Below are positions 8,358 to 48,715 of a DNA stretch of 50,999 nt, piece after piece. The notes beneath the pieces are model-generated. The model was given only the letters and a program-made list of their open reading frames with translations, was not told the DNA's origin and made no database searches. How positions within the stretch are numbered: the stretch's first letter is position 1; each line of letters begins with the position of its first letter. The DNA is from Macrostomum lignano (lineage: Eukaryota), in assembly GCA_002269645.1 (NCBI GenBank), contig NIVC01004308.1:1-50999 (forward strand). Direction: 5' to 3'. The translations under genes were made by a program, and so were the position numbers.

Positions 8358-9830
8358 TTACAATGGTGCGTCCCGAACAATCGTGCCATCAGCTTTAGCA
8401 ATTGACATATATTCCTCTAGAAACAATACGTGGGCGTCAAGTGCCTGATTACCGGTTTTATTAATCTCTAACATATAATTAAGTCCAATATTGGCTACGT
8501 TTTCTTTCTGTGCCGTTAGATCATAAACAACCACTGGATGAATGTTTAGAAACTCTGTGGGTGTGTACTGAGGGACGGCATACGCTTCATTTTTGGCATA
8601 ATCTTGATAATATTTTATAAAATCATTAACATTATTATTTGCAATATTTAGATTAAGAGGATCTTTAACCGGATAATATTGATCATCAACCTGCAGGCGG
8701 ATATTCTGAACATTAAACTCGTTAATTGCAGCAACTGCGTTGTCTGTTGCGGTGGCTGCTTGTTCTGCTATGGCACCGGATTGAAGCCAATATAAATCCC
8801 CATTTGCTCTTTTACTCCTTCTATTTGTTATCTTAAACCAAACAAAAATATATCTCACCCGACGTTTTGATGTCAGTATTTGCCACTGGAATGAATCCTG
8901 ATTGTTATTAATGGTTCGCATAAAGTGTCTACGATTCAAATAAAATATTTCCTGATCATGCGTTAATTGATTATCGATGTGTTTTAAAAGCGGAGCTGTT
9001 ACCTCAATAGTTGGTACGACTAATTGAATTGAATCTATACGAACTGCTATATCGGTTGAAATTGAGGTTCCATAAAGTATCCTAGGCTGATATCCACCAG
9101 ATATTTGCAACTGTATCCCAAATTTTAATCCTTTCCATACCCGATTTGGTGAGAAGAACCCAAATAGCGGGAAGATTGAAAAGTCCTGCTCATATGCTGT
9201 TGCTGTGGTTAAAACCGCGACTGGGAATTTATTCTGACGAGCTATAAAACCTGTATTAATATCTTTTGTATTAGTCATGGTGGTTACAACTGGAACTATG
9301 TTTGTATTAAGGTAAACAATTAGCGCTGCAGTATCTGCACCGGCTGCGTTTTGTACATTAGGTAAAACTACTGCTTGCCCGTTACCTTTATCCGGCATCC
9401 ACCCAACATTATCACCAACTTGTTTTGATAAATAAGTATAATTTAAATGTTTCAAAACTCCATTAATCTCTGCGGGGTTTGATGATGTCTCAACCTCAGC
9501 ACCATTAACAGTTAGTTGAGCTTGGGAAAAACATTTATAAAACCAATCATTTTCAATTATTATTCCGGATCGATCTGCGATATCTCCGCCTGCAAGAGCA
9601 GTTCCATCATTTCTAGTATACAACCATCTAACGCGGAAAAACGCATTTTTCATATCCAATATAGTGTTGGTTGCGCCGATGTCAAAAGTTACCGTTCCAG
9701 TAGTAAAGTTATTTGAATTATCACTTGTTGGTAGGGTATAATTTAAATCGTTTGCTCTGACCTCATTAATATACTGTCGGTGCTTTTTGAAATGAAATTT
9801 ATCACTCCACATAGTTTTTGTTTCAGCCAT
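8358..9830 (-). CDS. Major capsid protein (double jelly-roll)
   Basis: 490 aa, adjacent to ATPase; AQLTVNGAEVE, RLQVDDQYYP, HPVVVYDLT motifs typical of Polinton MCP. Confidence 0.85.
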   Translation of the reverse strand: MAETKTMWSDKFHFKKHRQYINEVRANDLNYTLPTSDNSNNFTTGTVTFDIGATNTILDMKNAFFRVRWLYTRNDGTALAGGDIADRSGIIIENDWFYKCFSQAQLTVNGAEVETSSNPAEINGVLKHLNYTYLSKQVGDNVGWMPDKGNGQAVVLPNVQNAAGADTAALIVYLNTNIVPVVTTMTNTKDINTGFIARQNKFPVAVLTTATAYEQDFSIFPLFGFFSPNRVWKGLKFGIQLQISGGYQPRILYGTSISTDIAVRIDSIQLVVPTIEVTAPLLKHIDNQLTHDQEIFYLNRRHFMRTINNNQDSFQWQILTSKRRVRYIFVWFKITNRRSKRANGDLYWLQSGAIAEQAATATDNAVAAINEFNVQNIRLQVDDQYYPVKDPLNLNIANNNVNDFIKYYQDYAKNEAYAVPQYTPTEFLNIHPVVVYDLTAQKENVANIGLNYMLEINKTGNQALDAHVLFLEEYMSIAKADGTIVRDAPL

Positions 9831-9864
9831 TTTTTTAAGTTAAAAAAGTTTTTTATGTTAAAAA

Positions 9865-10535
9865 ATGAGTCAATTTATGGACGTTGATGGAGAGTTAGCG
9901 ATTTATAAAGAGAAGCAAAGATATTCTGATTTTGTTAGAAATTTACAAAAAAGAAAGTTAGGAATACAATTAGCGGGTGAAAGATTTGCTGCTCCTTTTG
10001 TTAATCCTATTACTGGGAAAATTAGTGAACTAGAAAAAACAGATAAAGATCTTCTGGAAAAAATTGCTAAAAATACTGAGCCAAAAGAGGATGAAATTTT
10101 GGATGAGCCGCCTGCTTATGATGTTGATCAAGCTCAATTGAGAGTTGCAGAGATTAGGGCTGCAGAAAGGGGTGGAGTTGATGAATATCCGAGAGCTGCA
10201 CCAACTAGTATTGCTGTGACAGATTTAGGTAATAATAATTATCGAATTGGTGGAGTTGATAAAAATCGAAATGAACTATATAGAGAATTGGGCGGAGCAT
10301 ATAATATTGTTATGAACCCTAGGGTAAAATTTAACCCTGAATTATATACTAGGGATGAATTAGTAAGTGCAAAAATTTTTTATGATGAGTTGGGAGTAAG
10401 AGCTGCTAAAAATACCAGCTTGTATAAAAGATTGTTAATTCTATAAATAACAAACCAGCTGTTGGAGAAGGATTTAAAACTCCTAGAAAACTTGTTTTAG
10501 CTGCCGCGAAAGCTGCTGGACATACTGGTGTTTAA
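9865..10535 (+). CDS. Conserved Polinton protein (putative core/PZ-like); -1 frameshift near 10440
   Basis: Intact 221-aa version in copy 2 (42210..42875); divergent from MCP; GxG-F putative protease site. Confidence 0.6.
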
Positions 10536-10562
10536 TTAATTGTTAAATTTATTTTTTATAAA

Positions 10563-11152
10563 ATGGAAACTAATAAGATTTGTACTAAGTGTAAACAAGA
10601 AAAACCGATGACGAAAGAATTTTATTTTTGGAGAAATGATTCAAAAAAATTTAGAAATGATTGTCGATCTTGTCATAATACCTCATCTGCTATTTGGATA
10701 AAAAACAATAAAGATAAATGGAATGAATATAGAAAAAATAAGTATCACACTGATGATAATTACAAACATATTGTTTTAATTAGAAATAGAATAAATTGGG
10801 CGTTGAAAAATTTTAATGACAAGGACTATATCTCATATCTTGGTTGCACAAAAGAATTCTTTTTTGATTGGTTAAATTTCACAAGAAATTATTATGTATC
10901 AAAAGATTATACTGGAAAGTTAGATATTGATCATTTCATTCCCGCTTCTTCGTTTAGTTACAAAGATGAAGATCAGATGAAAAAGTCTGAACATTGGACA
11001 AATAAAAGATACTTAACTAGCGTAGATAATAACTATAAAAAAGTTAAACAACCAACCATTGAAGAGTTTGCAAAACAATTGGTGCTTTCATGTATTTTTA
11101 AGGCTATTAAAAATGAGCAACCGAACGAAGTTCGCGTTCCTTCGGAACGATC
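10563..11152 (+). CDS. Free-standing HNH (NCLDV-type) endonuclease; ORF runs on to 11303 in this copy because of a 29-nt insert
   Basis: CTKC...CRSC zinc motif, YLGC, LDIDHFIP, HWTN...DNN HNH core. Confidence 0.8.
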
Positions 11153-12752
11153 GGGCGGAGCCGCGTGCCTTAGGCACGATCAAATAGTGTTTGAAGGAGG
11201 ATTGTTAGATGTTCAAAAAGGATTAACAAGCTTACCACCAATCTTTACTACTGGAAGGTATACTGGGGAACTACATTTACCATCAATGAACTTCACAGGT
11301 TAACCCGTGGCCTGAGTGAGGAAGGCAATGTCCTTGCTAGTCACTATTTGTGGCGACATCTCCAAATTGCGTGAAACCCGTCATACTGCTTCAAGTACCA
11401 CTTCAATTGAGAAATCTTTTGAAGGAACAGAGGTAACTCCTCTTCCCAAAGGTAAAAAGCTTGAAGACACGGTGGCAATGCGCAGCCAAGCTCCTAAGTA
11501 TTTTAAATATAAGGAGAAGGTTCAGAGAGCAGACGGAGATGGGCGGTAATTATCGCCGCTTAAGGTGTGCTCCAGCCTCTTTCGAAAGATTGAGGGTAAA
11601 CTACCCGGCACTCGCTTAGATTTGAGATTAAATCCTGATGACACCCCAAAAGCCGATTCAATTCCCATAAATGGAATTGATTGGTTAGCATACTATCATG
11701 ACTTAGCATACAGAGATGCTGATAAGAACACACCCGAGGAAGCATTAAGATTAAAACATGAAGCCGATCAAAAAATGATTCAAGGATTAGATAACTTGCA
11801 GGGATTATCGGTAGGTCAAAAATTAACTAGGTGGATGGTTAAAAAGATTCTACAATCTAAAGTTAAATTTGGTTTGGGAATTAATTATAATCAACATGGA
11901 AATAATTGTGTTGAGTGTTTGTTGTTAAGTGGCGGTGGGTTAAGTTCTGATGAGGCAAAGATTCTTCATAAAGAATATCGAAAACCTAAATTTTATAGAA
12001 AAATCATGAACTTCAAAAAGAACGAAATTTGGTATGCTGATTTAATGTCTATGCCGATCGATAAAGGATATAAATATATTTTAACCATATTAGATGGTTT
12101 TACTCGATACGCGTGGGCTGTTCCTTTGAAATCCAAAAAAGGAGAGGATGTTGCTGCTGCTTTTAGAAGTCTTGGAGAAAAAAGCGAAAGATTGTGTGTT
12201 GACGAAGGAAAAGAATTTTACAATCCTCATATGTATAAATTGTATCATTTTGAAAAAGGAAAAGAAAGGATGAAGGGCGCGAATGGGGAGTATATTAATA
12301 AAATTTATTCTATTTATGGAGAGAGTAAAAACGCATTAATAGAAAGATTTAATCGAACTTTAGGTAAGAAATTGTGGTTTCAGTTTAGTCTTAATGGAAA
12401 CCAAAAATGGGTAAAAATATTACCAGACGTTGTAAAAGATTATAACAATTCATATCATTCGGCCATAAAGATGGCTCCTCAACAAGCTTATAACAAACCT
12501 GAAAATGTTAAGGTTACTTTTGGAAAATTTGAAAAAAATAAAAAGAAATCTTTTAAGGTTGGTGATTCTGTTTATATCTATAAATGGAAAGATAAGTTTG
12601 AAAAAGGAAGAAAAGGATATTGGAAGATAAGTGAGAAATTTACTATCAGTAAAGTTTTAAATACCAATCCTACAACCTATATAATTGCTGATAAGGACGG
12701 TGAAGAAATATTGGGTTCGTTTTATGAGAACCAACTAATATCAGCGAACTAA
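11113..12752 (+). CDS. Phospholipase A2 (parvovirus-type) fused to rve integrase; exon 1 11113..11300 (frameshift at ~11160), exon 2 11604..12752
   Basis: Spliced ELHLPSMNFTG|PGTRL restores the PLA2 Ca-loop; HDLAY and D catalytic residues; integrase W.ADL, D-EGKEF, IERFNRTL (DDE). Confidence 0.9.
11301..11603 (+). ncRNA. Group I self-splicing intron, subgroup IC1-like, 303 nt, no internal homing ORF
   Basis: P1 with U-G at 5' splice site (CAGGT/GCCTG), P2, P2.1, P3 CATCTCC(11357-63)/GGAGATG(11535-41), P/Q elements AATTGCGTGAAA/AATGCGCAGC, P5abc, P6, P7 GAGAGCA(11525-31)/TGCTCC(11568-73), P8, P9 with GAAA loop, P9.0; removal restores reading frame. Confidence 0.93.
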
Positions 12753-12762
12753 GTTCGAACAA

Positions 12763-12987
12763 TTACTTGAGACAACATGGTAGTAAATTTTTTATAACAA
12801 ACAAAAACAATATTATTACAATAATTGTTACTAATATTATTATTGACATTTGTTCAACTGTTATCAAACTTAAATTTTCATTAAGTTCATTAATTGGAAC
12901 ATTTCCGATGTAGGAATAGTTTACCTTCATTTTTTTATATATATTTTTCACAATAAATGTCGTTTCTGTTATAGAATAATAGTTCAT
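12763..12987 (-). CDS. Small single-TM viral protein (74 aa)
   Basis: Hydrophobic C-terminal helix; identical in copy 2 (39788..40012). Confidence 0.6.
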   Translation of the reverse strand: MNYYSITETTFIVKNIYKKMKVNYSYIGNVPINELNENLSLITVEQMSIIILVTIIVIILFLFVIKNLLPCCLK

Positions 12988-13003
12988 TTTTTAAATATTT
13001 TTT

Positions 13004-13318
13004 TCACATAAAAATTTCACTTTCATTCTCTGAATCGCTGGTTTCATATGAACTATTTGTTGATTCGGAATCTGTTGATCTAACCTCCCAATCATCCGAA
13101 TTTAAATAATCTCCAAGTTGAAATATTAACTCACCCTCTTGTTCTAAATCAAACATCTCATCTAGCTCTAATGGATAAAGTTTTAGGTCGTGCTTGTCGT
13201 CATATTTTAAATAAACTTCATCAATTATTCCATTCAAAATATGTTGTTTTATTATCTCTGCATTTTTAGCAACAGTCTCAAAAGTATCACTAACAGAAAA
13301 GGTGTAAACTCGGGTCAT
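13004..13318 (-). CDS. Acidic hypothetical viral protein (104 aa), terminal gene
   Basis: Near-identical in copy 2 (39457..39771); AAAAATG start. Confidence 0.65.
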   Translation of the reverse strand: MTRVYTFSVSDTFETVAKNAEIIKQHILNGIIDEVYLKYDDKHDLKLYPLELDEMFDLEQEGELIFQLGDYLNSDDWEVRSTDSESTNSSYETSDSENESEIFM

Positions 13319-13372
13319 TTTTAGTAACAGAAAAAGACCCTTCGCGCCTGCGGCGCGGGCAAGGGGTTATAG

Positions 13373-13643
13373 AGTAGTAGTATAGAAAAAGACGCTTCTA
13401 GATCAGACCTTATTTTAATGGCCGTTTGTAAGGTCTTAAGAGGGGGGACGCGAGGGGGGTGTTGGGGAGTGTTTGGAAGTGTTTGGAAGTGATTTTTATT
13501 GTTAGGGGTGATTATGGGTGATTAGATGTATTAATGGTGTTTAGATGTGTTTTTTTATTTACCCCCCGTGTCCCCCCTCTAGACCCTTAAAACGGTCATT
13601 AAAAAAGTGCTCTGGGTCTAGAAGCGTCTTTTTATATACTACT
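13373..13643. repeat. Terminal region of copy 1 (TIR-side end) with internal inverted copy of the terminus
   Basis: AGTAGTAGTATAGAAAAAGACGCTTCTAGA at 13373 and TCTAGAAGCGTCTTTTTATATACTACT ending 13643; same segment at 39132..39402. Confidence 0.85.
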
Positions 13644-14000
13644 CAGATTCCCAACAATCTCACCCAGATTCCCAAAAATCTCAGCTAGATTCCGAACAAG
13701 CTCACCCAGATTCCCAACAAGCTCACCCAGATTCCCAAAAATCTCACCCAGATTCTCAACAACCTCACCCAGATTCCCAAAAATCTCACCCAGATTCTCA
13801 ACAACCTCACCCAGATTCCCAAAAATCTCACCCAGATTCCCACAAATCTCACCCAGATTCCCAAAAATCTCACCCAGATTCCCACAAATCTCACCCAGAT
13901 TCTCAACAACCTCACCCAGATTCCCAAAAATCTCACCCAGATTCTCAACAACCTCACCCAGATTCCCAACAATTTCACCCAGATTCCCAACAATCTCACC
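13644..14000. repeat. 21-bp minisatellite (CACCCAGATTCCCAACAATCT), insertion site of copy 1
   Basis: Direct tandem units visible. Confidence 0.9.
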
Positions 14001-14029
14001 AAGAGTATATCAATCTCATCAATCCGCAG

Positions 14030-38314: not shown

Positions 38315-38397
<83 letters not shown>

Positions 38398-39131
38398 GAT
38401 AGATAGACTAGTGTGCGGATAGATAGACTAGTGTGTGAATAGATGGACTAGTGCGTGAATAGATAGACTAGTGTGTGAATAGATGGACTAGTGTTCGTGG
38501 ATAGATAGACTAGTGTGTGAATAGATGGACTAGTGTTCGTGAATAGATGGACTAGTGTGTGAATAGATGGACTAGTGTTCGTGAATAGATGGACTAGTGT
38601 GTGAATAGATGGACTAGTGTTCGTGGATAGATAGACTAGTGTGTGAATAAATGGACTAGTGTGTGAATAGATGGACTAGTGTTCGTGAATAGATAGACTA
38701 GTGCGTGAATAGATGGACTAGTGTTCGTGAATAGATGGACTAGTGTGTGAATAGATGGACTAGTGTGTGAATAGATAGACTAGTGTGTGAATAGATGGAC
38801 TAGTGTGCGTGAATAGATAGACTAGTGTGTGAATAGATAGACTAGTGTGCGTGAATAGATGGACTAGTGTGCGTGAATAGATGGACTAGTGTGTGAATAG
38901 ATGGACTAGTGTACGTGAATAGATGGACTAGTGTGCGTGAATGGATAGACGAGTGTGCAGTGAGCTCTCAAATACCAGTACGTAGATCTTGGATAATAAA
39001 AGAGGTTCTCACCCGGAGAGTGCCGGAAGTAGGTCACGCAGGCCTGGGAGACGCTGTTCCGGCTTAACTCATCCGGGATCTCGCTGAGACGATTGAGCCT
39101 CAGGTTAAAGAAGTCCCGCTTAGTGTGCATG
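38135..39131 (-). CDS. 3' end of an unidentified host gene: exon 39131-39013 (cut by Polinton copy 2) and last exon 38202-38135
   Basis: G|GTGAG donor at 39012 and CAG|GC acceptor at 38203 are phase-matched, giving ...TYFRHSPGAMRAIKECLAELETQDAADED*. Confidence 0.65.
38318..38950. repeat. (CT)n(GT)n microsatellite followed by 20-24-bp minisatellite (GGACTAGTGTGTGAATAGAT) in host intron
   Basis: Direct. Confidence 0.9.
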
Positions 39132-40022: not shown

Positions 40023-41633
40023 TTAGTTCGCAGACATTATCTGGTTCTCATAAAAAGAACCCAATATTTCTTCACCGTCCTTATCAGCAATTATATAGGT
40101 TGTAGGATTGGTATTTAAAACTTTACTGATAGTAAATTTCTCACTTATCTTCCAATATCCTTTTCTTCCTTTTTCAAACTTATCTTTCCATTTATAGATA
40201 TAAACAGAATCACCAACCTTAAAAGATTTCTTTTTATTTTTTTCAAATTTTCCAAAAGTAACTTTAACGTTTTCAGGATTGTTATAAGCTTGTTGAGGAG
40301 TCATCTTTATCGCCGAATGATATGAATTGTTATAATCTTTCACTACGTCTGGTAATATTTTTACCCACTTTTGGTTACCATTAAGACTAAACTGAAACCA
40401 TAATTTCTTACCTAAAGTTCTATTAAATCTTTCTATTAATGCGTTTTTACTCTCTCCATAAATAGAATAAATTTTATTAATATACTCCCCATTCGCGTCT
40501 TTTTTCCTTTCTTGTCCTTTTTCAAAATGATATAATTTATACATATGAGGATTGTAAAATTCTTTTCCTTCGTCAACACACAAACGTTCGCTTTTTTCTC
40601 CAAGACTTCTAAAAGCAGCAGCAACATCCTCTCCTTTTTTGGATTTCAAAGGAACAGCCCACGCGTATCGAGTAAAACCATCTAATATGGTTAAGATATA
40701 TTTATATCCTCTTTCGTTCGGCATCGACATTAAATCAGCATACCAAATTTCATTCTTTTTGAAGTTCATGATTTTTCTATAAAATTTCGGTTTTCGATAT
40801 TCTTTATGAAGAATCTTTGCCTCATCAGAACTTAACCCACCACCACTTAACAACAAACACTCAACACAATTATTTCCATGTTGATTATAATTAATTCCCA
40901 AACCAAATTTAACTTTAGACTGCAAGATCTTTTTAACCATCCACCTAGTTAATTTTTGACCTACCGATAATCCCTGCAAGTTATCTAATCCTTGAATCAT
41001 TTTTTGATCGGCTTCATGTTTTAATCTTAATGCTTCCTCGGGCGGGTTCTTGTCAGCATCTCTATATGCTAAGTCGTGATAGTATGCTAACCAATCAATC
41101 CCATTTATTGGAATTGAATCAGATTTTGGAGTATTGTCAGGATTTAATCTCAAATCTAAGCGAGTGCCGGGTAGTTTACCCTCAATCTTTCGAAAGAGGC
41201 TGGAGCACACCTTAAGCGGCGATAATTACCGCCCATCTCCGTCTGCTCTCTGAACCTTCTCCTTATATTTAAAATACTTAGGAGCTTGGCTGCGCATTGC
41301 CACCGTGTCTTCAAGCTTTTTACCTTTGGGAAGAGGAGTTACCTCTGTTCCTTCAAAAGATTTCTCAATTGAAGTGGTACTTGAAGCTGTATGACGGGTT
41401 TCACGCAATTTGGAGATGTCGCCACAAATAGTGACTAGCAAGGACATTGCCTTCCTCACTCAGGCCACGGGTTAACCTGTGAAGTTCATTGATGGTAGGT
41501 GTAGCTCACCCGTATACCTCCCAGTAGTAAATATTGGTGGTAAGCTTGTTAATCCTTTTTGAACATCTAAAAATCCTCCTTCAAATACTAATTGATCGAA
41601 CCTGCGGTTCGCGAACTTCGTTCGGTTGCTCAT
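40023..41633 (-). CDS. PLA2-rve integrase fusion (copy 2); exon 1 41633-41475, exon 2 41171-40023, open after splicing
   Basis: AAAAATG MSNRTKF...NFTG | PGTRL...HDLAY...DDE integrase. Confidence 0.9.
41172..41474 (-). ncRNA. Group I intron (IC1-like), copy 2, 303 nt
   Basis: Reverse complement differs from 11301..11603 at one position (CATACTGC vs CATACAGC) by manual comparison. Confidence 0.93.
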
Positions 41634-42182
41634 TTTTAATAGCCTTAAAAATACATGAAAGCACCAATTGTTTCGCAAATTCTTCAATTGTTGGTTGTTT
41701 AACTTTTTTATAGTTATTATCTACGCTAGTTAAGTATCTTTTATTTCTCCAATTTTCAGACTTTTTAATCTGATCATCGTCTTTGTAACTAAATGAAGAA
41801 GCGGGGATGAAATGATCAATATCTAACTTTCCAGTATAATCTTTTGATACATAATAATTTCTTGTGAAATTTAACCAATCAAAAAAGAATTCTTTTGTGC
41901 AACCAAGATATGAGATATAGTCCTTGTCATTAAAATTTTTCAACGCCCAATTTATTCTATTTCTAATTAAAACAATATGTTTGTAATTATCATCAGTGTG
42001 ATACTTATTTTTTCTATATTCATTCCATTTATCTTTATTGTTTTTATCCAAATAGCAGATGAGGTATTATGACAAGATCGACAATCATTTCTAAATTTTT
42101 TTGAATCATTTCTCCAAAAATAAAATTCTTTCGTCATCGGTTTTTCTTGTTTACACTTAGTACAAATCTTATTAGTTTCCAT
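41581..42182 (-). CDS. HNH endonuclease (copy 2), one frameshift near 42045
   Basis: Split over ORFs 41967..42182 and 41581..42051. Confidence 0.78.
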
Positions 42183-46668: not shown

Positions 46669-48715
46669 ATGTTATTTTCTGGAACACCCTCATGGAACGG
46701 AACAACAAGTAGTGGTGGTGGTGGCACATCTGGTGGAATAAGTGTTACATTTGGAGATAATCGATATATTAATGAAGATGAAGGTTATAAAAAAACTGAA
46801 ATTGATAATAAATTAAATTTAAAAAGAAATGTTGCAGATTCCTATACTAAAACTCAAATAGATGATTCACTAAATCTGAAACGGAACGTAGCCGATTCCT
46901 ATACCAAAACCGAAGTTGATAATTCATTAAATTTAAAACGCAATACAGCCGATTCTATACCAAAACCGAAGTTGATAATTCATTAAATTTGAAACGGAAC
47001 GTAGCCGATTCTTATACAAAAACCGAAGTTGATAATTCATTAAATTTGAAACGGAACGTAGCCGATTCTTATACCAAAACCGAAGTTGATAATGGATTAA
47101 ATTTAAAAAGAGATGTAACTGATTCTTATTCTCGAACTGATTCTGATTCACGTTATGTTCAAACCACCGCAACCGGAAACCTAGATATGAGCAACAACCG
47201 AATTATAAATGTTTCAATTACAACTAGTGATTCAGTGGTTGATAAGAACTATGTCGATAATCAAGTTGCCACTCGTAGTGGTAATATTAATATGAATAAT
47301 TTTAAATTAACAAATTTATTATTTGGAACAGAGAACGCAGACTCGATAACTCTAGGCCAAGTAAACGAGCGAGCTAATGCAACCGACGCCGATATTTTTA
47401 CCACGCCGCTTACATCAAATACTTCAAATCCTGATGTTGTTCTTACAGCATCTGAAAATGGCAACACAGCTTTTCGAGTTGGAGATGGAAGCCTTGCGAC
47501 ACAATGGTCACCAAATACCGGAACCACAACCAATATGGAAATTCAATTTGAATTTTTAGGTTATAATAGAAGAATATTTGAATTAAGAATTACAGGCAGT
47601 GAAACAATTGAGATACCCTCGGGGTGGTCGGTTCGCGCAAAAAATGTTGCTACCGATTCATGGACGACATTAACTACGTCGGGATCACCAGTTCAAGCAA
47701 CATCATTTGCTCTATCTAATTTAACGACTAATTTTTGGAAATATTATAGCGTATTCTTCCCAACTGGTGGTACCGGTACACAACCTATCGAGGTTCGTCA
47801 AATACAATTATTTGAACACCGTGTTGAAATTCAAGATCTTAATTGGCCAACTCAAATACTTTCTGCAGTTCCGCGAGCGTACGTAGATCAGCTAGCTACT
47901 CCAACATCAAATGGTAGAATGTCTGGAAGCGATAAAAATAAATTGGATGGAATACCTGCTATTGATGCGGCCTTGTTCGAACCAGTAATTTGCAATTGGT
48001 CTGGATATCAAAATCCAACAACCGCCGGAGATATATATCCAGTCGGTTCTTTAATTGGTGACGCTTCTTATATCGATTATCAAAATGGAGCTAGAATTAC
48101 TCGTGAAACCGCAGGTGTAAGTGGGGCTTTACAATTTAATTTCACACATTTTCAAAATATATCTGCGTCTTTCTTTTCCGAGTTGCTAATTCTACAGGAG
48201 ATGGTGCAGATGCGGTTTGGTTTTATGCATATTGTCACGAACGTCCAACATCGGAATTTGGAACTGGATTATCAACCGACGCCGGGCTGATAGTGTTTGC
48301 TAGTGAGTGGACTGATAGGTTTGGAGTTGTTTGGAGTAATAAAAAATCAGACGGATCTACGGTTCGTAACGATGTTAGTAGTGATGCGGATCAAACTGTA
48401 GCCTATGCTAATATTGATAACGGCGATTGGCATTTATTTGAAGTTAATATTTTAAATCAAAGGGTTTGGTACCGATTACAGTCATACAATGTTGCTGGTG
48501 ATTCTTTTACCCTCATTGGACAGAACGTTTTCACATATGATAGTGGAACTTGGGGAACTTTAGATAAATCTGGAACCCTTATGGGTTTTGGTGCTCGAAC
48601 TGGTGGAGCGGATGCTGCACATTTTATTCGTGGTGCAGTTGTATGTGGTAGTACGTCGTTTGGTTATGTTTTTCCCTCTACTGCTTATTTGGAAAAACCT
48701 CCTACTCAAATATAA
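46669..48715 (+). CDS. Fibre/receptor-binding protein (copy 2), frameshifted
   Basis: Split over ORFs 46669..46986, 46989..48290, 48293..48715. Confidence 0.7.

What the first reader, a model, noticed from the sequence alone, without database searches (positions are those of the whole stretch)
11574..11604. The intron appears to end in omega-A instead of the near-universal omega-G
Seen: three lines of evidence put the 3' splice site at ...AAACTA|CCC. These are the frame and the GPG motif, P9.0 (A11574-G11575 pairing with C11601-T11602 immediately before the last base), and a plausible P10 (IGS CCGTG against exon CCCGG with one mismatch). The last base is A in both copies, so it is not a single sequencing error, and the G-binding G-C pair in P7 is canonical. 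Established: omega-A is very rare; I recall it from scleractinian mitochondrial ND5 introns. Inference: the second step may be slow, protein-assisted, or switched on by host A-to-I editing of A11603 (speculative), which would put splicing under host control.
Basis: partly seen in the sequence, partly recalled or inferred. Interest (0 to 1): 0.82.

Follow-up and report, generated by a model that had tools for sequence, protein, structure and literature searches.

The report
Group I intron ending in A
A self-splicing group I intron inside the integrase gene of a virus-like element really does end in A instead of the almost universal G; this is a rare single-base change in an otherwise intact ribozyme, and whether it still splices cannot be told from sequence.

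Summary
A 303-nt group I intron lies at 11301-11603 (+), with a second copy at 41474-41172 (-). Rfam RF00028 scores it 62.1 bits, E 7.6e-15. It splits the Gly|Pro junction of the FTG|PGT calcium-loop motif in a phospholipase-A2-like/rve integrase gene. The gene belongs to a polinton-like virus (PLV) present as two inverted copies, about 96.5% identical.

The 3' splice site A11603|C11604 is fixed by four lines of evidence:
- 70 of 71 homologues read straight through the motif, with the same spacing to the HD catalytic motif.
- Pfam PF08398 scores 32.0 bits for the NFTG|PGT product against 22.9 bits with a GKL insertion.
- P9.0 and P10 fit, and P10 shows one compensatory change.
- Three other intron lineages at the same codon junction (L001/L002, L021, L023) carry G at the homologous last position.

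So omega-A is a derived G-to-A change. The rest of the ribozyme is intact, with 11 compensatory pairs against L001 and a canonical G-binding pair, G11527-C11572. G11594 and G11595 are buried in the P9 stem.

Function is unresolved. It may splice accurately but slowly, as the coral mitochondrial ND5-717 omega-A intron does, or it may be a dead allele in an endogenous copy. Nothing supports A-to-I editing.

The parts
10563..11132 (+). HNH/endonuclease-VII-like ORF immediately upstream of the intron-bearing gene. In copy 1 it is fused in frame to exon 1.
   Evidence: phrog_1035 endonuclease VII, E 3e-8; phrog_2255 HNH endonuclease, E 3.7e-5. ORF 10563-11303.
11178..11300 (+). 3' part of exon 1 of the PLA2-like/rve integrase gene, ending ...HLPSMNFTG. 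The last base, U11300, forms the U.G wobble at the 5' splice site.
   Evidence: Translation. Homologues align as ...GELH.P..NFTG. Between the two copies dS is 0.35 and dN/dS 0.06.
11296..11314 (+). P1 hairpin: 11296-11302 (CAGGUUA) pairs with 11308-11314 (UGGCCUG). U11300.G11310 marks the 5' splice site.
   Evidence: Rfam alignment. Pair table, identical in L001.
11305..11309 (+). 5' part of the internal guide sequence, which pairs with the first bases of exon 2 to form P10.
   Evidence: Window pairs: C11604-G11309, C11606-G11307, G11607-C11306, G11608-C11305, with one mismatch C11605/U11308. L001 has CCAGGU against AACCUUG, with A-U where the window has C-G, a compensatory change.
11301..11603 (+). 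Group I intron, copy 1 (303 nt). It has P1-P10 with a P5abc-type extension and no internal ORF.
   Evidence: RF00028, 62.1 bits, E 7.6e-15. Eleven base pairs show both-side compensatory changes against L001, in P3, P4, P5, P5a, P5b, P5c and P6b.
11525..11531 (+). P7 5' strand: G11525, bulged A11526, and G11527 (the G-binding pair with C11572), followed by A-G-C-A.
   Evidence: Pairs G25-C73, G27-C72, A28-U71, G29-C70, C30-G69 and A31-U68 are identical in L001 and L002.
11568..11573 (+). P7 3' strand (UGCUCC).
11574..11575 (+). P9.0 5' strand (AG).
   Evidence: Pairs with C11601 and U11602. L021 has AC/GU in the equivalent places.
11576..11595 (+). P9 hairpin (CCUC...GAGG). G11594 and G11595 are paired within it.
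   Evidence: Pair table. Pairing probability 0.996-0.997 in a local fold. The Rfam model ends here, 9 nt short of the real 3' end, as it also does in L001 and L023.
11601..11602 (+). P9.0 3' strand (CU).
11603..11603 (+). Omega position, the last intron base. It is A here and G at the homologous base of L001:1528, L002, L021 and L023:2500.
11604..12752 (+). Exon 2: PGTRLDL..., the rest of the PLA2-like domain (HDLAY), the rve integrase core and a C-terminal domain.
   Evidence: PF00665 rve and PF08398. Between the two copies dN/dS is 0.088, and neither copy has a stop.
41172..41474 (-). Group I intron, copy 2. It differs from copy 1 at one base (equivalent to 11387). Omega-A is at 41172.
41475..41633 (-). 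Exon 1 of copy 2 with its own in-frame ATG (53 codons).
   Evidence: Read. ORF 41472-41687.
40023..41171 (-). Exon 2 of copy 2.

Best explanation
A11603 is the true last base of a structurally intact 303-nt group I intron. The intron sits in phase 0 between the Gly and Pro codons of the F-T-G|P-G-T calcium-loop motif. The host gene encodes a phospholipase-A2-like/rve integrase of an endogenous polinton-like virus.

Shown: the A is a derived G-to-A substitution of the normal omega-G.

Inferred mechanism:
- Step 1, attack of exogenous G after U11300, which is held in P1 by the U11300.G11310 wobble, should be normal. The guanosine pocket (G11527-C11572 in P7) is canonical.
- In step 2 an adenine cannot make the base triple with that G-C pair. 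The 3' splice site therefore has to be held mainly by P9.0 (AG/CU) and P10.
- I expect accurate but slow or inefficient exon ligation giving ...NFTG|PGTRLDL..., possibly helped by a protein. This is what is seen for the natural omega-A intron ND5-717 of hexacoral mitochondria.

The result would be a hypomorphic integrase gene rather than an edited or host-switched one.
For: Junction:
- 70 of 71 homologues have a contiguous [FYH]xGxxT motif. The modal spacing to HD is 34 aa, which equals the window product with NFTG|PGT.
- PF08398 scores 32.0 bits with NFTG|PGT. With the GKL insertion it scores 22.9, below the cut-off of 23.9.
- The closest intron-less gene, L022, reads AATTTTACTGGC|CCAGGAACT.

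Homologous omega-G in same-site introns:
- L001 and L002...GAGGGAGAACTG|CCAGGT.
- L021...ACTAAGTG|CCAGGA.
- L023...GTGTGAAAAG|CCTTTC, RF00028 52 bits.

Intact ribozyme:
- 62.1 bits.
- Eleven compensatory pairs against L001; P7, P9.0 and P9 are invariant.
- P10 has one compensatory change.

Gene under selection on both sides of the intron: dN/dS is 0.088 for exon 2 and 0.06 for the exon 1 tail, with dS 0.18-0.35.

Bound on post-integration decay:
- The lowest gene dN between copies is about 0.005. Neutral divergence since integration is therefore at most about 0.5%.
- That predicts about 1.5 changes in 303 nt. A change hitting exactly omega and then being shared by both copies is improbable a priori.
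- This favours an omega-A allele that already circulated in replicating elements which still managed to integrate.

Precedent: ND5-717 lacks omega-G yet gives perfectly ligated exons in vivo, at reduced efficiency (PMC6545197; omega-A also in PMC8146996).
Against: - There are no RNA data, so splicing is not shown.
- The G-binding pair has not co-changed to A-U, so by established biochemistry omega-A should bind very poorly. The base-triple basis is in PMC2588497; the Tetrahymena G414A and G264:C311 work is from my own knowledge.
- The two copies are not independent. Their intron tract is one shared segment (1 difference in 361 nt) within a mosaic alignment that has many other identical runs of 150-750 nt. 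Purifying selection measured on the exons therefore cannot be tied to the omega-A period.
- Both copies show possible decay. A 29-nt insertion puts copy 1's own ATG out of frame. Copy 2 has 1-nt indels in the HNH-like, ATPase and fibre-like ORFs, though these lie mostly in homopolymers and could be read errors.
- No other omega-A relative was found.
Confidence: 0.45

Rival explanations
1. Dead allele. The G-to-A change at omega abolishes exon ligation, so these two endogenous copies carry an inactivated integrase gene. The change is shared because one tract was copied between the copies or their ancestors. That copying could be gene conversion, recombination, or DNA-level homing, none of which needs splicing. 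Integration, if it came after the mutation, used integrase supplied in trans by other elements.
For: - The canonical G-C pocket has no compensating change.
- The intron tract is nearly identical within about 20% diverged flanks, in a mosaic alignment.
- Other lesions are present in both copies.
- An HNH/EndoVII-like gene next to the intron could drive DNA-level spread whatever the splicing status.
- PLVs occur in hundreds of copies in some protist genomes, so trans-complementation is plausible (PMC12220804).
Against: - Apart from omega the ribozyme has no defect.
- Exon 2 is open in both copies, with dN/dS 0.088.
- Neutral post-integration divergence is bounded at about 0.5%, so a random hit on this one base that was then shared is unlikely.
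- ND5-717 shows that omega-A need not be lethal to splicing (PMC6545197).
Confidence: 0.38
2. Cryptic omega-G. Splicing uses a nearby G instead. One option is G11594 with the 5' site after U11300, giving NFTG-GKL-PGT. The other is G11595 with the 5' site after U11301, giving NFTG-CKL-PGT. Either leaves three extra residues in the calcium loop.
For: - Both combinations are in frame (read).
- The Rfam model's last consensus G aligns to G11594.
- U11301 also faces a G (G11309) in P1.
Against: - G11594 and G11595 are paired in the conserved P9 stem, with pairing probability 0.996.
- P10 with exon GGUAA or GUAAA would be at most two wobble pairs (read).
- None of 70 homologues has an insertion there.
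- PF08398 drops below its cut-off with GKL.
- The Rfam model also stops 9 nt short of the proven omega-G in L001 and L023, so its end point is an alignment artefact of this intron class.
Confidence: 0.07
3. Host A-to-I editing of A11603 turns omega into inosine, which acts as a G analogue, and so licenses the second step.
For: None from sequence. The only support is the chemical argument that inosine keeps O6 and N1-H and is a weak G substitute (ITP effects in PMC2588497).
Against: - A11603 is flanked by a 2-bp P9.0 and a 4-of-5 P10, not by the long duplex that ADARs need.
- The element is a polinton-like virus embedded in GC-richer, tandem-repeat-rich DNA. Intron-bearing PLVs have been reported from protists (PMC12220804), and ADARs are confined to animals (my own knowledge).
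- The host itself was not identified.
Confidence: 0.02
4. Sequencing or assembly error at the last intron base.
For: Many 1-nt indels between the copies lie in homopolymers, which suggests some read error in the assembly.
Against: It is a substitution, not an indel. It is present in two separate copies that differ elsewhere by about 3.5%.
Confidence: 0.01

Closest known systems
ND5-717 group I intron of hexacoral (sea anemone, corallimorph, stony coral) mitochondria
   Same: [quoted passage not shown] It has an otherwise recognisable core and ligated exons are observed in vivo, at reduced efficiency (PMC6545197, PMC8146996).
   Different: ND5-717 is mitochondrial, obligatory, vertically inherited and often giant, with genes in P8 and back-splicing. 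The intron here is a compact 303 nt in a virus-like nuclear-integrated element. Its close same-site relatives still have omega-G, and no RNA evidence exists for it.
Group I introns catalogued in polinton-like viruses of protists (Paulinella micropora, Desmodesmus armatus, Rhodomonas lacustris cluster C3/GKS1; PMC12220804)
   Same: RF00028 hits of about 300-380 bp inside PLVs that carry an rve integrase. In R. lacustris they lie in 'genes encoding a short ~50 aa protein' near the MCP gene. That fits the 53-codon exon 1 seen here, about 1.3 kb from the MCP gene.
   Different: That survey did not assign the host gene, the splice sites or the terminal base. I could not establish whether the window comes from one of those genomes.
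Same-site introns in metagenomic PLA2-integrase genes (L001/L002, L021, L023)
   Same: The insertion point is identical (...ACAGGT|CC...). L001 and L002 share the core, the P9 hairpin and a 9-nt tail between P9 and omega. L023 has the same 9-nt tail.
   Different: All of them end in G. L001 carries a 233-aa internal ORF. L021 and L023 have different P7 and P9 sequences.
Engineered Tetrahymena ribozyme specificity switch (G264:C311 to A:U paired with G414A; Michel 1989, Been and Perrotta 1991; from my own knowledge)
   Same: It shows that omega and the P7 pair form one nucleoside-binding site, and that A at omega works well only if the pocket is changed.
   Different: Here the pocket is unchanged (G11527-C11572), so this is not a natural specificity switch.
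Free-standing homing endonuclease next to an ORF-less intron ('collaborative homing' in T-even phages; my own knowledge)
   Same: An HNH/EndoVII-like ORF lies directly upstream of a gene that carries an ORF-less group I intron.
   Different: No cleavage-site or mobility evidence exists. The ORF is frameshifted in copy 2 and fused to exon 1 in copy 1.

Membership tests
Group I intron (Rfam RF00028) | Covariance-model score at or above the gathering threshold | tested here: met
   62.1 bits against 50, E 7.6e-15. The hit appears only in the focused scan; the whole-window scan missed it.
Group I intron (Rfam RF00028) | Conserved helices P3-P8 supported by covariation | tested here: met
   Eleven pairs show both-side changes against L001 and 40 pairs are unchanged. 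The only breaks are in the non-homologous P8 and P6b tips.
Group I intron (Rfam RF00028) | U.G wobble at the 5' splice site in P1 | tested here: met
   U11300.G11310, the same as in L001.
Group I intron (Rfam RF00028) | G-C guanosine-binding pair in P7 with a bulged A | tested here: met
   G11527-C11572, bulged A11526, G11525-C11573.
Group I intron (Rfam RF00028) | Terminal guanosine (omega-G) | tested here: not met
   A11603 and A41172. The homologous base is G in L001, L002, L021 and L023.
Group I intron (Rfam RF00028) | Self-splicing activity | not testable with these tools
   Needs RNA data or in vitro transcription.
Natural omega-A group I introns (ND5-717 type) | Last intron base is A, with the 3' splice site fixed independently | tested here: met
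   Protein homology, Pfam score, P9.0, P10 and homologous introns.
Natural omega-A group I introns (ND5-717 type) | Correctly ligated exons observed in vivo | not testable with these tools
   No transcript data. No protein with the spliced sequence is in the protein collection; the best hit is 70% identical.
Natural omega-A group I introns (ND5-717 type) | Omega-A conserved across a lineage | tested here: inconclusive
   It occurs only in the two window copies, which share one near-identical tract. All other relatives have G.
PLA2-like domain (PF08398) fused to rve integrase (PF00665) | Pfam hits above cut-off on the spliced product | tested here: met
   PF08398 scores 32.0 against 23.9. rve scores 32.3 against 32.6, which is marginal, but more than 100 homologues carry precomputed PF00665.
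Polinton-like virus / Maverick-type element | Capsid module, packaging ATPase, PolB and rve integrase in an AT-rich block inside GC-richer DNA | tested here: inconclusive
   - Pox_A32-type ATPase scores 28.9 against 22.8.
- The rve integrase is present.
- A PolB-like ORF with YADTDS is present.
- The MCP and penton assignments rest on size and position only; Pfam and PHROGs gave nothing.
- GC is 28-37% in the element against 45-63% in the surrounding DNA.
- TIRs and TSDs lie outside the window.

The most novel reading that the evidence does not exclude
The omega-A intron is splicing-competent and was maintained in replicating polinton-like viruses. Its slow or factor-dependent second step then acts as a throttle on production of the PLA2-integrase, and so on integration versus replication. 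It would be the second natural class of functional omega-A group I intron and the first outside organelles.
Probability: 0.3. Interest if true: 0.65.

Novelty: new member of a known kind. Interest (0 to 1): 0.45.

Why it matters
Omega-G is the most conserved single nucleotide of group I introns, because it occupies the same pocket as the guanosine cofactor. Natural exceptions are nearly confined to one coral mitochondrial intron.

A second, compact (303 nt) example with omega-G sister introns at the same site would be a convenient system. It could show how a ribozyme ligates exons without omega-G, relying on P9.0 and P10 alone or with a protein helper.

It also matters for annotation of polinton-like viruses. 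The 'short ~50-aa gene with an intron' may in fact be exon 1 of the integrase. Splicing efficiency would then set how much integrase such elements can make.

If the allele is simply dead, the finding is an ordinary loss-of-function mutation in an endogenous copy.

Tried and rejected
- The whole-window Rfam scan at gathering threshold found nothing. The intron appears only in a focused scan. Multi-locus gathering scans likewise missed L023.
- I first took the Rfam end point, G11594, as a sign that the intron ends in G. I rejected this because the model stops 9 nt short of the proven omega-G in L001 and L023 too.
- An exact look-up of the window's MCP gave no record, so the source was not identified.
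- A protein search with the 53-aa exon 1 peptide, meant to find other ORFs ending in NFTG-stop, found no candidates.
- Core-pattern scans of IMG/VR and the JGI metagenomes returned only same-class introns in giant-virus RNA-polymerase genes (FDGDEMN motif), none at this site.
- P0016 and P0029 looked like intron-truncated homologues. They are frameshifted or deleted long-read contigs.
- I considered reading the very low divergence of the intron between copies (1 in 303) as purifying selection on the ribozyme. I rejected this because the alignment is mosaic, with many other identical runs of up to 753 nt.
- I considered shifted splice sites. U11301 with C11604 would give G-S-G with omega-C. U11292 or U11293 with G11595 or G11596 are also possible on paper. 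I rejected them all because they lack a U.G wobble, or conflict with omega-G in L001 and with the conserved Pro.

Full report
**What is in the window**

Positions 1626-13645 and 50999-39130 are inverted copies of one element, about 96.5% identical.
- The element is AT-rich (28-37% GC). It flanks a 25-kb GC-richer stretch (45-63% GC) full of tandem repeats.
- Each copy encodes a PolB-like ORF with YADTDS, a Pox_A32-type packaging ATPase, capsid-sized ORFs, an HNH/endonuclease-VII-like ORF and an rve integrase.
- This is the gene set of a polinton-like virus (PLV) or Maverick-type element integrated in a eukaryotic genome.
- Neither the source genome nor the host was identified.

**Is there an intron?**

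Yes.
- A focused Rfam scan gives RF00028 at 11291-11594 with 62.1 bits (gathering score 50) and E 7.6e-15. The whole-window scan at gathering threshold missed it.
- The upstream ORF ends ...HLPSMNFTG followed by TAA at 11301-11303.
- The downstream ORF reads ...KIEGKL-PGTRLDLRLNPD...HDLAY... followed by an rve core.

**Where is the 3' splice site?**

Three in-frame options exist on paper:
- (a) U11300| with A11603|C11604, giving NFTG|PGT.
- (b) U11300| with G11594|, giving NFTG-GKL-PGT.
- (c) U11301| with G11595|, giving NFTG-CKL-PGT.

Five independent lines point to (a).

1. Protein homology. A search returned 156 homologues, most with PF08398 (PLA2-like) plus PF00665 (rve).
 - Of 71 with enough N-terminal sequence, 70 have a contiguous [FYH]xGxxT motif, most often FTGPGT.
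 - The modal distance to the HD catalytic motif is 34 residues, exactly what option (a) gives.
2. Pfam score. PF08398 scores 32.0 bits for product (a). With the GKL insertion it scores 22.9, below the 23.9 cut-off.
3. Homologous introns at the same codon junction all end in G at the aligned base:
 - L001 and L002...ATTGAGGGAGAACTG|CCAGGTACA, against the window's ...ATTGAGGGTAAACTA|CCCGGCACT, with no indel.
 - L021...ATAGTCCACTAAGTG|CCAGGAACA.
 - L023...GTGTGAAAAG|CCTTTCACT, itself RF00028 at 52 bits.
 - The closest intron-less gene, L022, reads ACTGGC|CCAGGA.
4. Helices. P9.0 (A11574-U11602, G11575-C11601) directly follows P7 and directly precedes position 11603. L021 has AC/GU in the same places.
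5. P10. It pairs exon CCCGG with C11305-G11309, with one mismatch. L001 keeps the same scheme with A-U where the window has C-G, a compensatory change.

Against options (b) and (c):
- G11594 and G11595 are paired in the conserved P9 stem, with pairing probability 0.996.
- Their P10 would be negligible.
- The Rfam model ends at G11594 only because this intron class has a 9-nt tail after P9. The model stops 9 nt short of the proven omega-G in L001 (1519 against 1528) and in L023 (2491 against 2500) as well.

**State of the ribozyme**

Aligned to L001 (about 75% identity), the window intron keeps every core helix.
- Eleven pairs changed on both sides: one each in P3, P4, P5 and P5b, three in P5a, and two each in P5c and P6b.
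- P7, P9.0 and P9 are invariant.
- The guanosine pocket is canonical: G11525-C11573, bulged A11526, G11527-C11572.
- Nothing has co-changed with omega.
- The terminal A is the only departure from consensus that I could find.

**Is the gene alive?**

Evidence for selection between the two copies:

| Gene or segment | dS | dN | dN/dS |
|---|---|---|---|
| Integrase exon 2 | 0.179 | 0.016 | 0.088 |
| Exon 1 tail | 0.35 | 0.0215 | 0.06 |
| MCP | 0.0854 | 0.0061 | 0.07 |
| Penton | 0.1019 | 0.005 | 0.05 |

- Most divergence therefore arose under selection, that is, in replicating elements.
- The lowest dN, about 0.005, bounds neutral post-integration change at roughly 0.5%.

Complications:
- The alignment is mosaic, with more than 20 identical runs of 150-750 nt between segments up to 13% diverged.
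- The intron lies in one such tract, 11278-11638, with a single difference at 11387. Its flanks are about 20% diverged, mostly at synonymous sites.
- So 'A in both copies' excludes a read error but amounts to one evolutionary event. The exon selection cannot be dated to the omega-A period.

Lesions in both copies:
- A 29-nt GC-rich hairpin cassette at 11133-11161 puts copy 1's own ATG (11114) out of frame. It also fuses the HNH-like ORF to exon 1.
- Copy 2 has 1-nt indels in the HNH-like, ATPase and fibre-like ORFs. Most sit in homopolymers and could be long-read errors.

**Mechanism**

Shown: an intact core, a canonical pocket, a U.G wobble at the 5' site, P9.0 and P10 at the 3' site, and A at omega.

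Inferred:
- Step 1 should proceed.
- Step 2 lacks the G.G-C base triple (basis in PMC2588497) and must be slow.
- Whether it is slow-but-sufficient or effectively dead cannot be decided here.

Two pieces of background bear on this:
- The hexacoral ND5-717 intron shows that a natural omega-A intron can still give perfectly ligated exons, at reduced efficiency (PMC6545197, PMC8146996).
- PLVs are known to carry group I introns. In Rhodomonas lacustris these lie in an unannotated '~50 aa' gene near the MCP gene, which resembles exon 1 here (PMC12220804).

| Reading | Probability |
|---|---|
| Leaky, accurate splicing | about 0.45 |
| Dead allele | about 0.38 |
| Cryptic G | about 0.07 |
| A-to-I editing | about 0.02 |
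| Sequence error | about 0.01 |

The editing idea has no support. There is no long duplex at A11603. The element type points to a protist host, and ADARs are animal enzymes (my own knowledge).

**Verdict**

This is a correct and careful observation of a rare feature, and the 3' end is now firmly placed. It is a new member of a known but very small kind, not a new mechanism. Its functional meaning awaits RNA data.

Noticed in passing
window 7420-7477, 7899-7928, 11133-11161 (copy 1 only); compare copy 2 around 41614: The larger indels between the two copies are GC-rich (52-70% GC) cassettes of short hairpins. Examples are CGTACCGAAGGTACG, CGTTCCGAAGGAACG, GGACGAAGTCC, CCCTTCGGG and CGTTCCTTCGGAACG, flanked by CGATC(G). 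They sit in intergenic DNA, in frame inside the ATPase ORF, and in the integrase leader. They look like a family of tiny mobile GC-hairpin modules. The 29-nt one shifts the integrase start out of frame in copy 1.
   Followed up: partly
window 10563-11132 (+); copy 2 about 42182-41581 (-): An HNH/endonuclease-VII-like ORF (phrog_1035, E 3e-8) lies directly upstream of the ORF-less intron. It is a possible free-standing homing endonuclease serving the intron. It is fused in frame to exon 1 in copy 1. In copy 2 it is frameshifted by a 1-nt deletion in an A-run.
   Followed up: partly
L001:694-1528, L002:1-145, L021:1-53, L023:2200-2500: The Gly|Pro junction of the PLA2 calcium-loop motif (...ACAGGT|CC...) is an insertion hot spot. 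At least four different group I intron lineages occupy exactly this site in metagenomic PLA2-integrase genes. The L001 intron carries a 233-aa ORF with a weak Eco47II-type restriction-endonuclease hit (E 6e-4, below the cut-off).
   Followed up: partly
window 11594 vs 11603; L001 1519 vs 1528; L023 2491 vs 2500: The Rfam RF00028 alignment ends 9 nt before the real 3' splice site in all three lineages, at the G that closes P9. Scans at gathering threshold over long inputs missed two of the introns altogether. Automated intron boundaries for this class are therefore unreliable.
   Followed up: yes
window 1626-13645 vs 50999-39130: Identity between the two inverted copies is mosaic. Runs of 150-753 identical bases alternate with segments up to 13% diverged (for example 4004-4400). 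This indicates recombination among related elements or gene conversion between the copies.
   Followed up: partly
L004:4384, L008/L018, L012/L016, L017, L015: Introns with a nearly identical catalytic core (AATCCGCAGCCAAGCTCCTAA ... GGTTCAGAGAGCAGACGG ... AAGGTGTGCTCCA) sit in giant-virus-type RNA polymerase genes around the FDGDEMN motif. This suggests exchange of this intron class between giant viruses and PLVs.
   Followed up: no
window 13644-39000: The DNA between the two copies is GC-richer and holds at least a dozen unrelated tandem arrays. Their periods are 4, 20-25, 40-42, 46, 51, 62 and 70-158 nt, with up to 28 copies. Arrays directly abut both inner ends of the elements, at 13644-14004 and 38391-38957.
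   Followed up: no
window 3903-5948 (-); copy 2 46669-48715 (+): A 681-aa fibre-like ORF has six or more tandem repeats of about 19 aa (DSYTKTEVDNSLNLKRN...). In copy 2 it is split into three ORFs by two 1-nt indels in homopolymers.
   Followed up: no
window 11114-11303 / 41633-41472: The '~50 aa protein gene containing a group I intron' reported for Rhodomonas lacustris cluster-C3 PLVs (PMC12220804) resembles the 53-codon exon 1 here. If it is the same locus, that short gene is the first exon of the PLA2-like/rve integrase.
   Followed up: no
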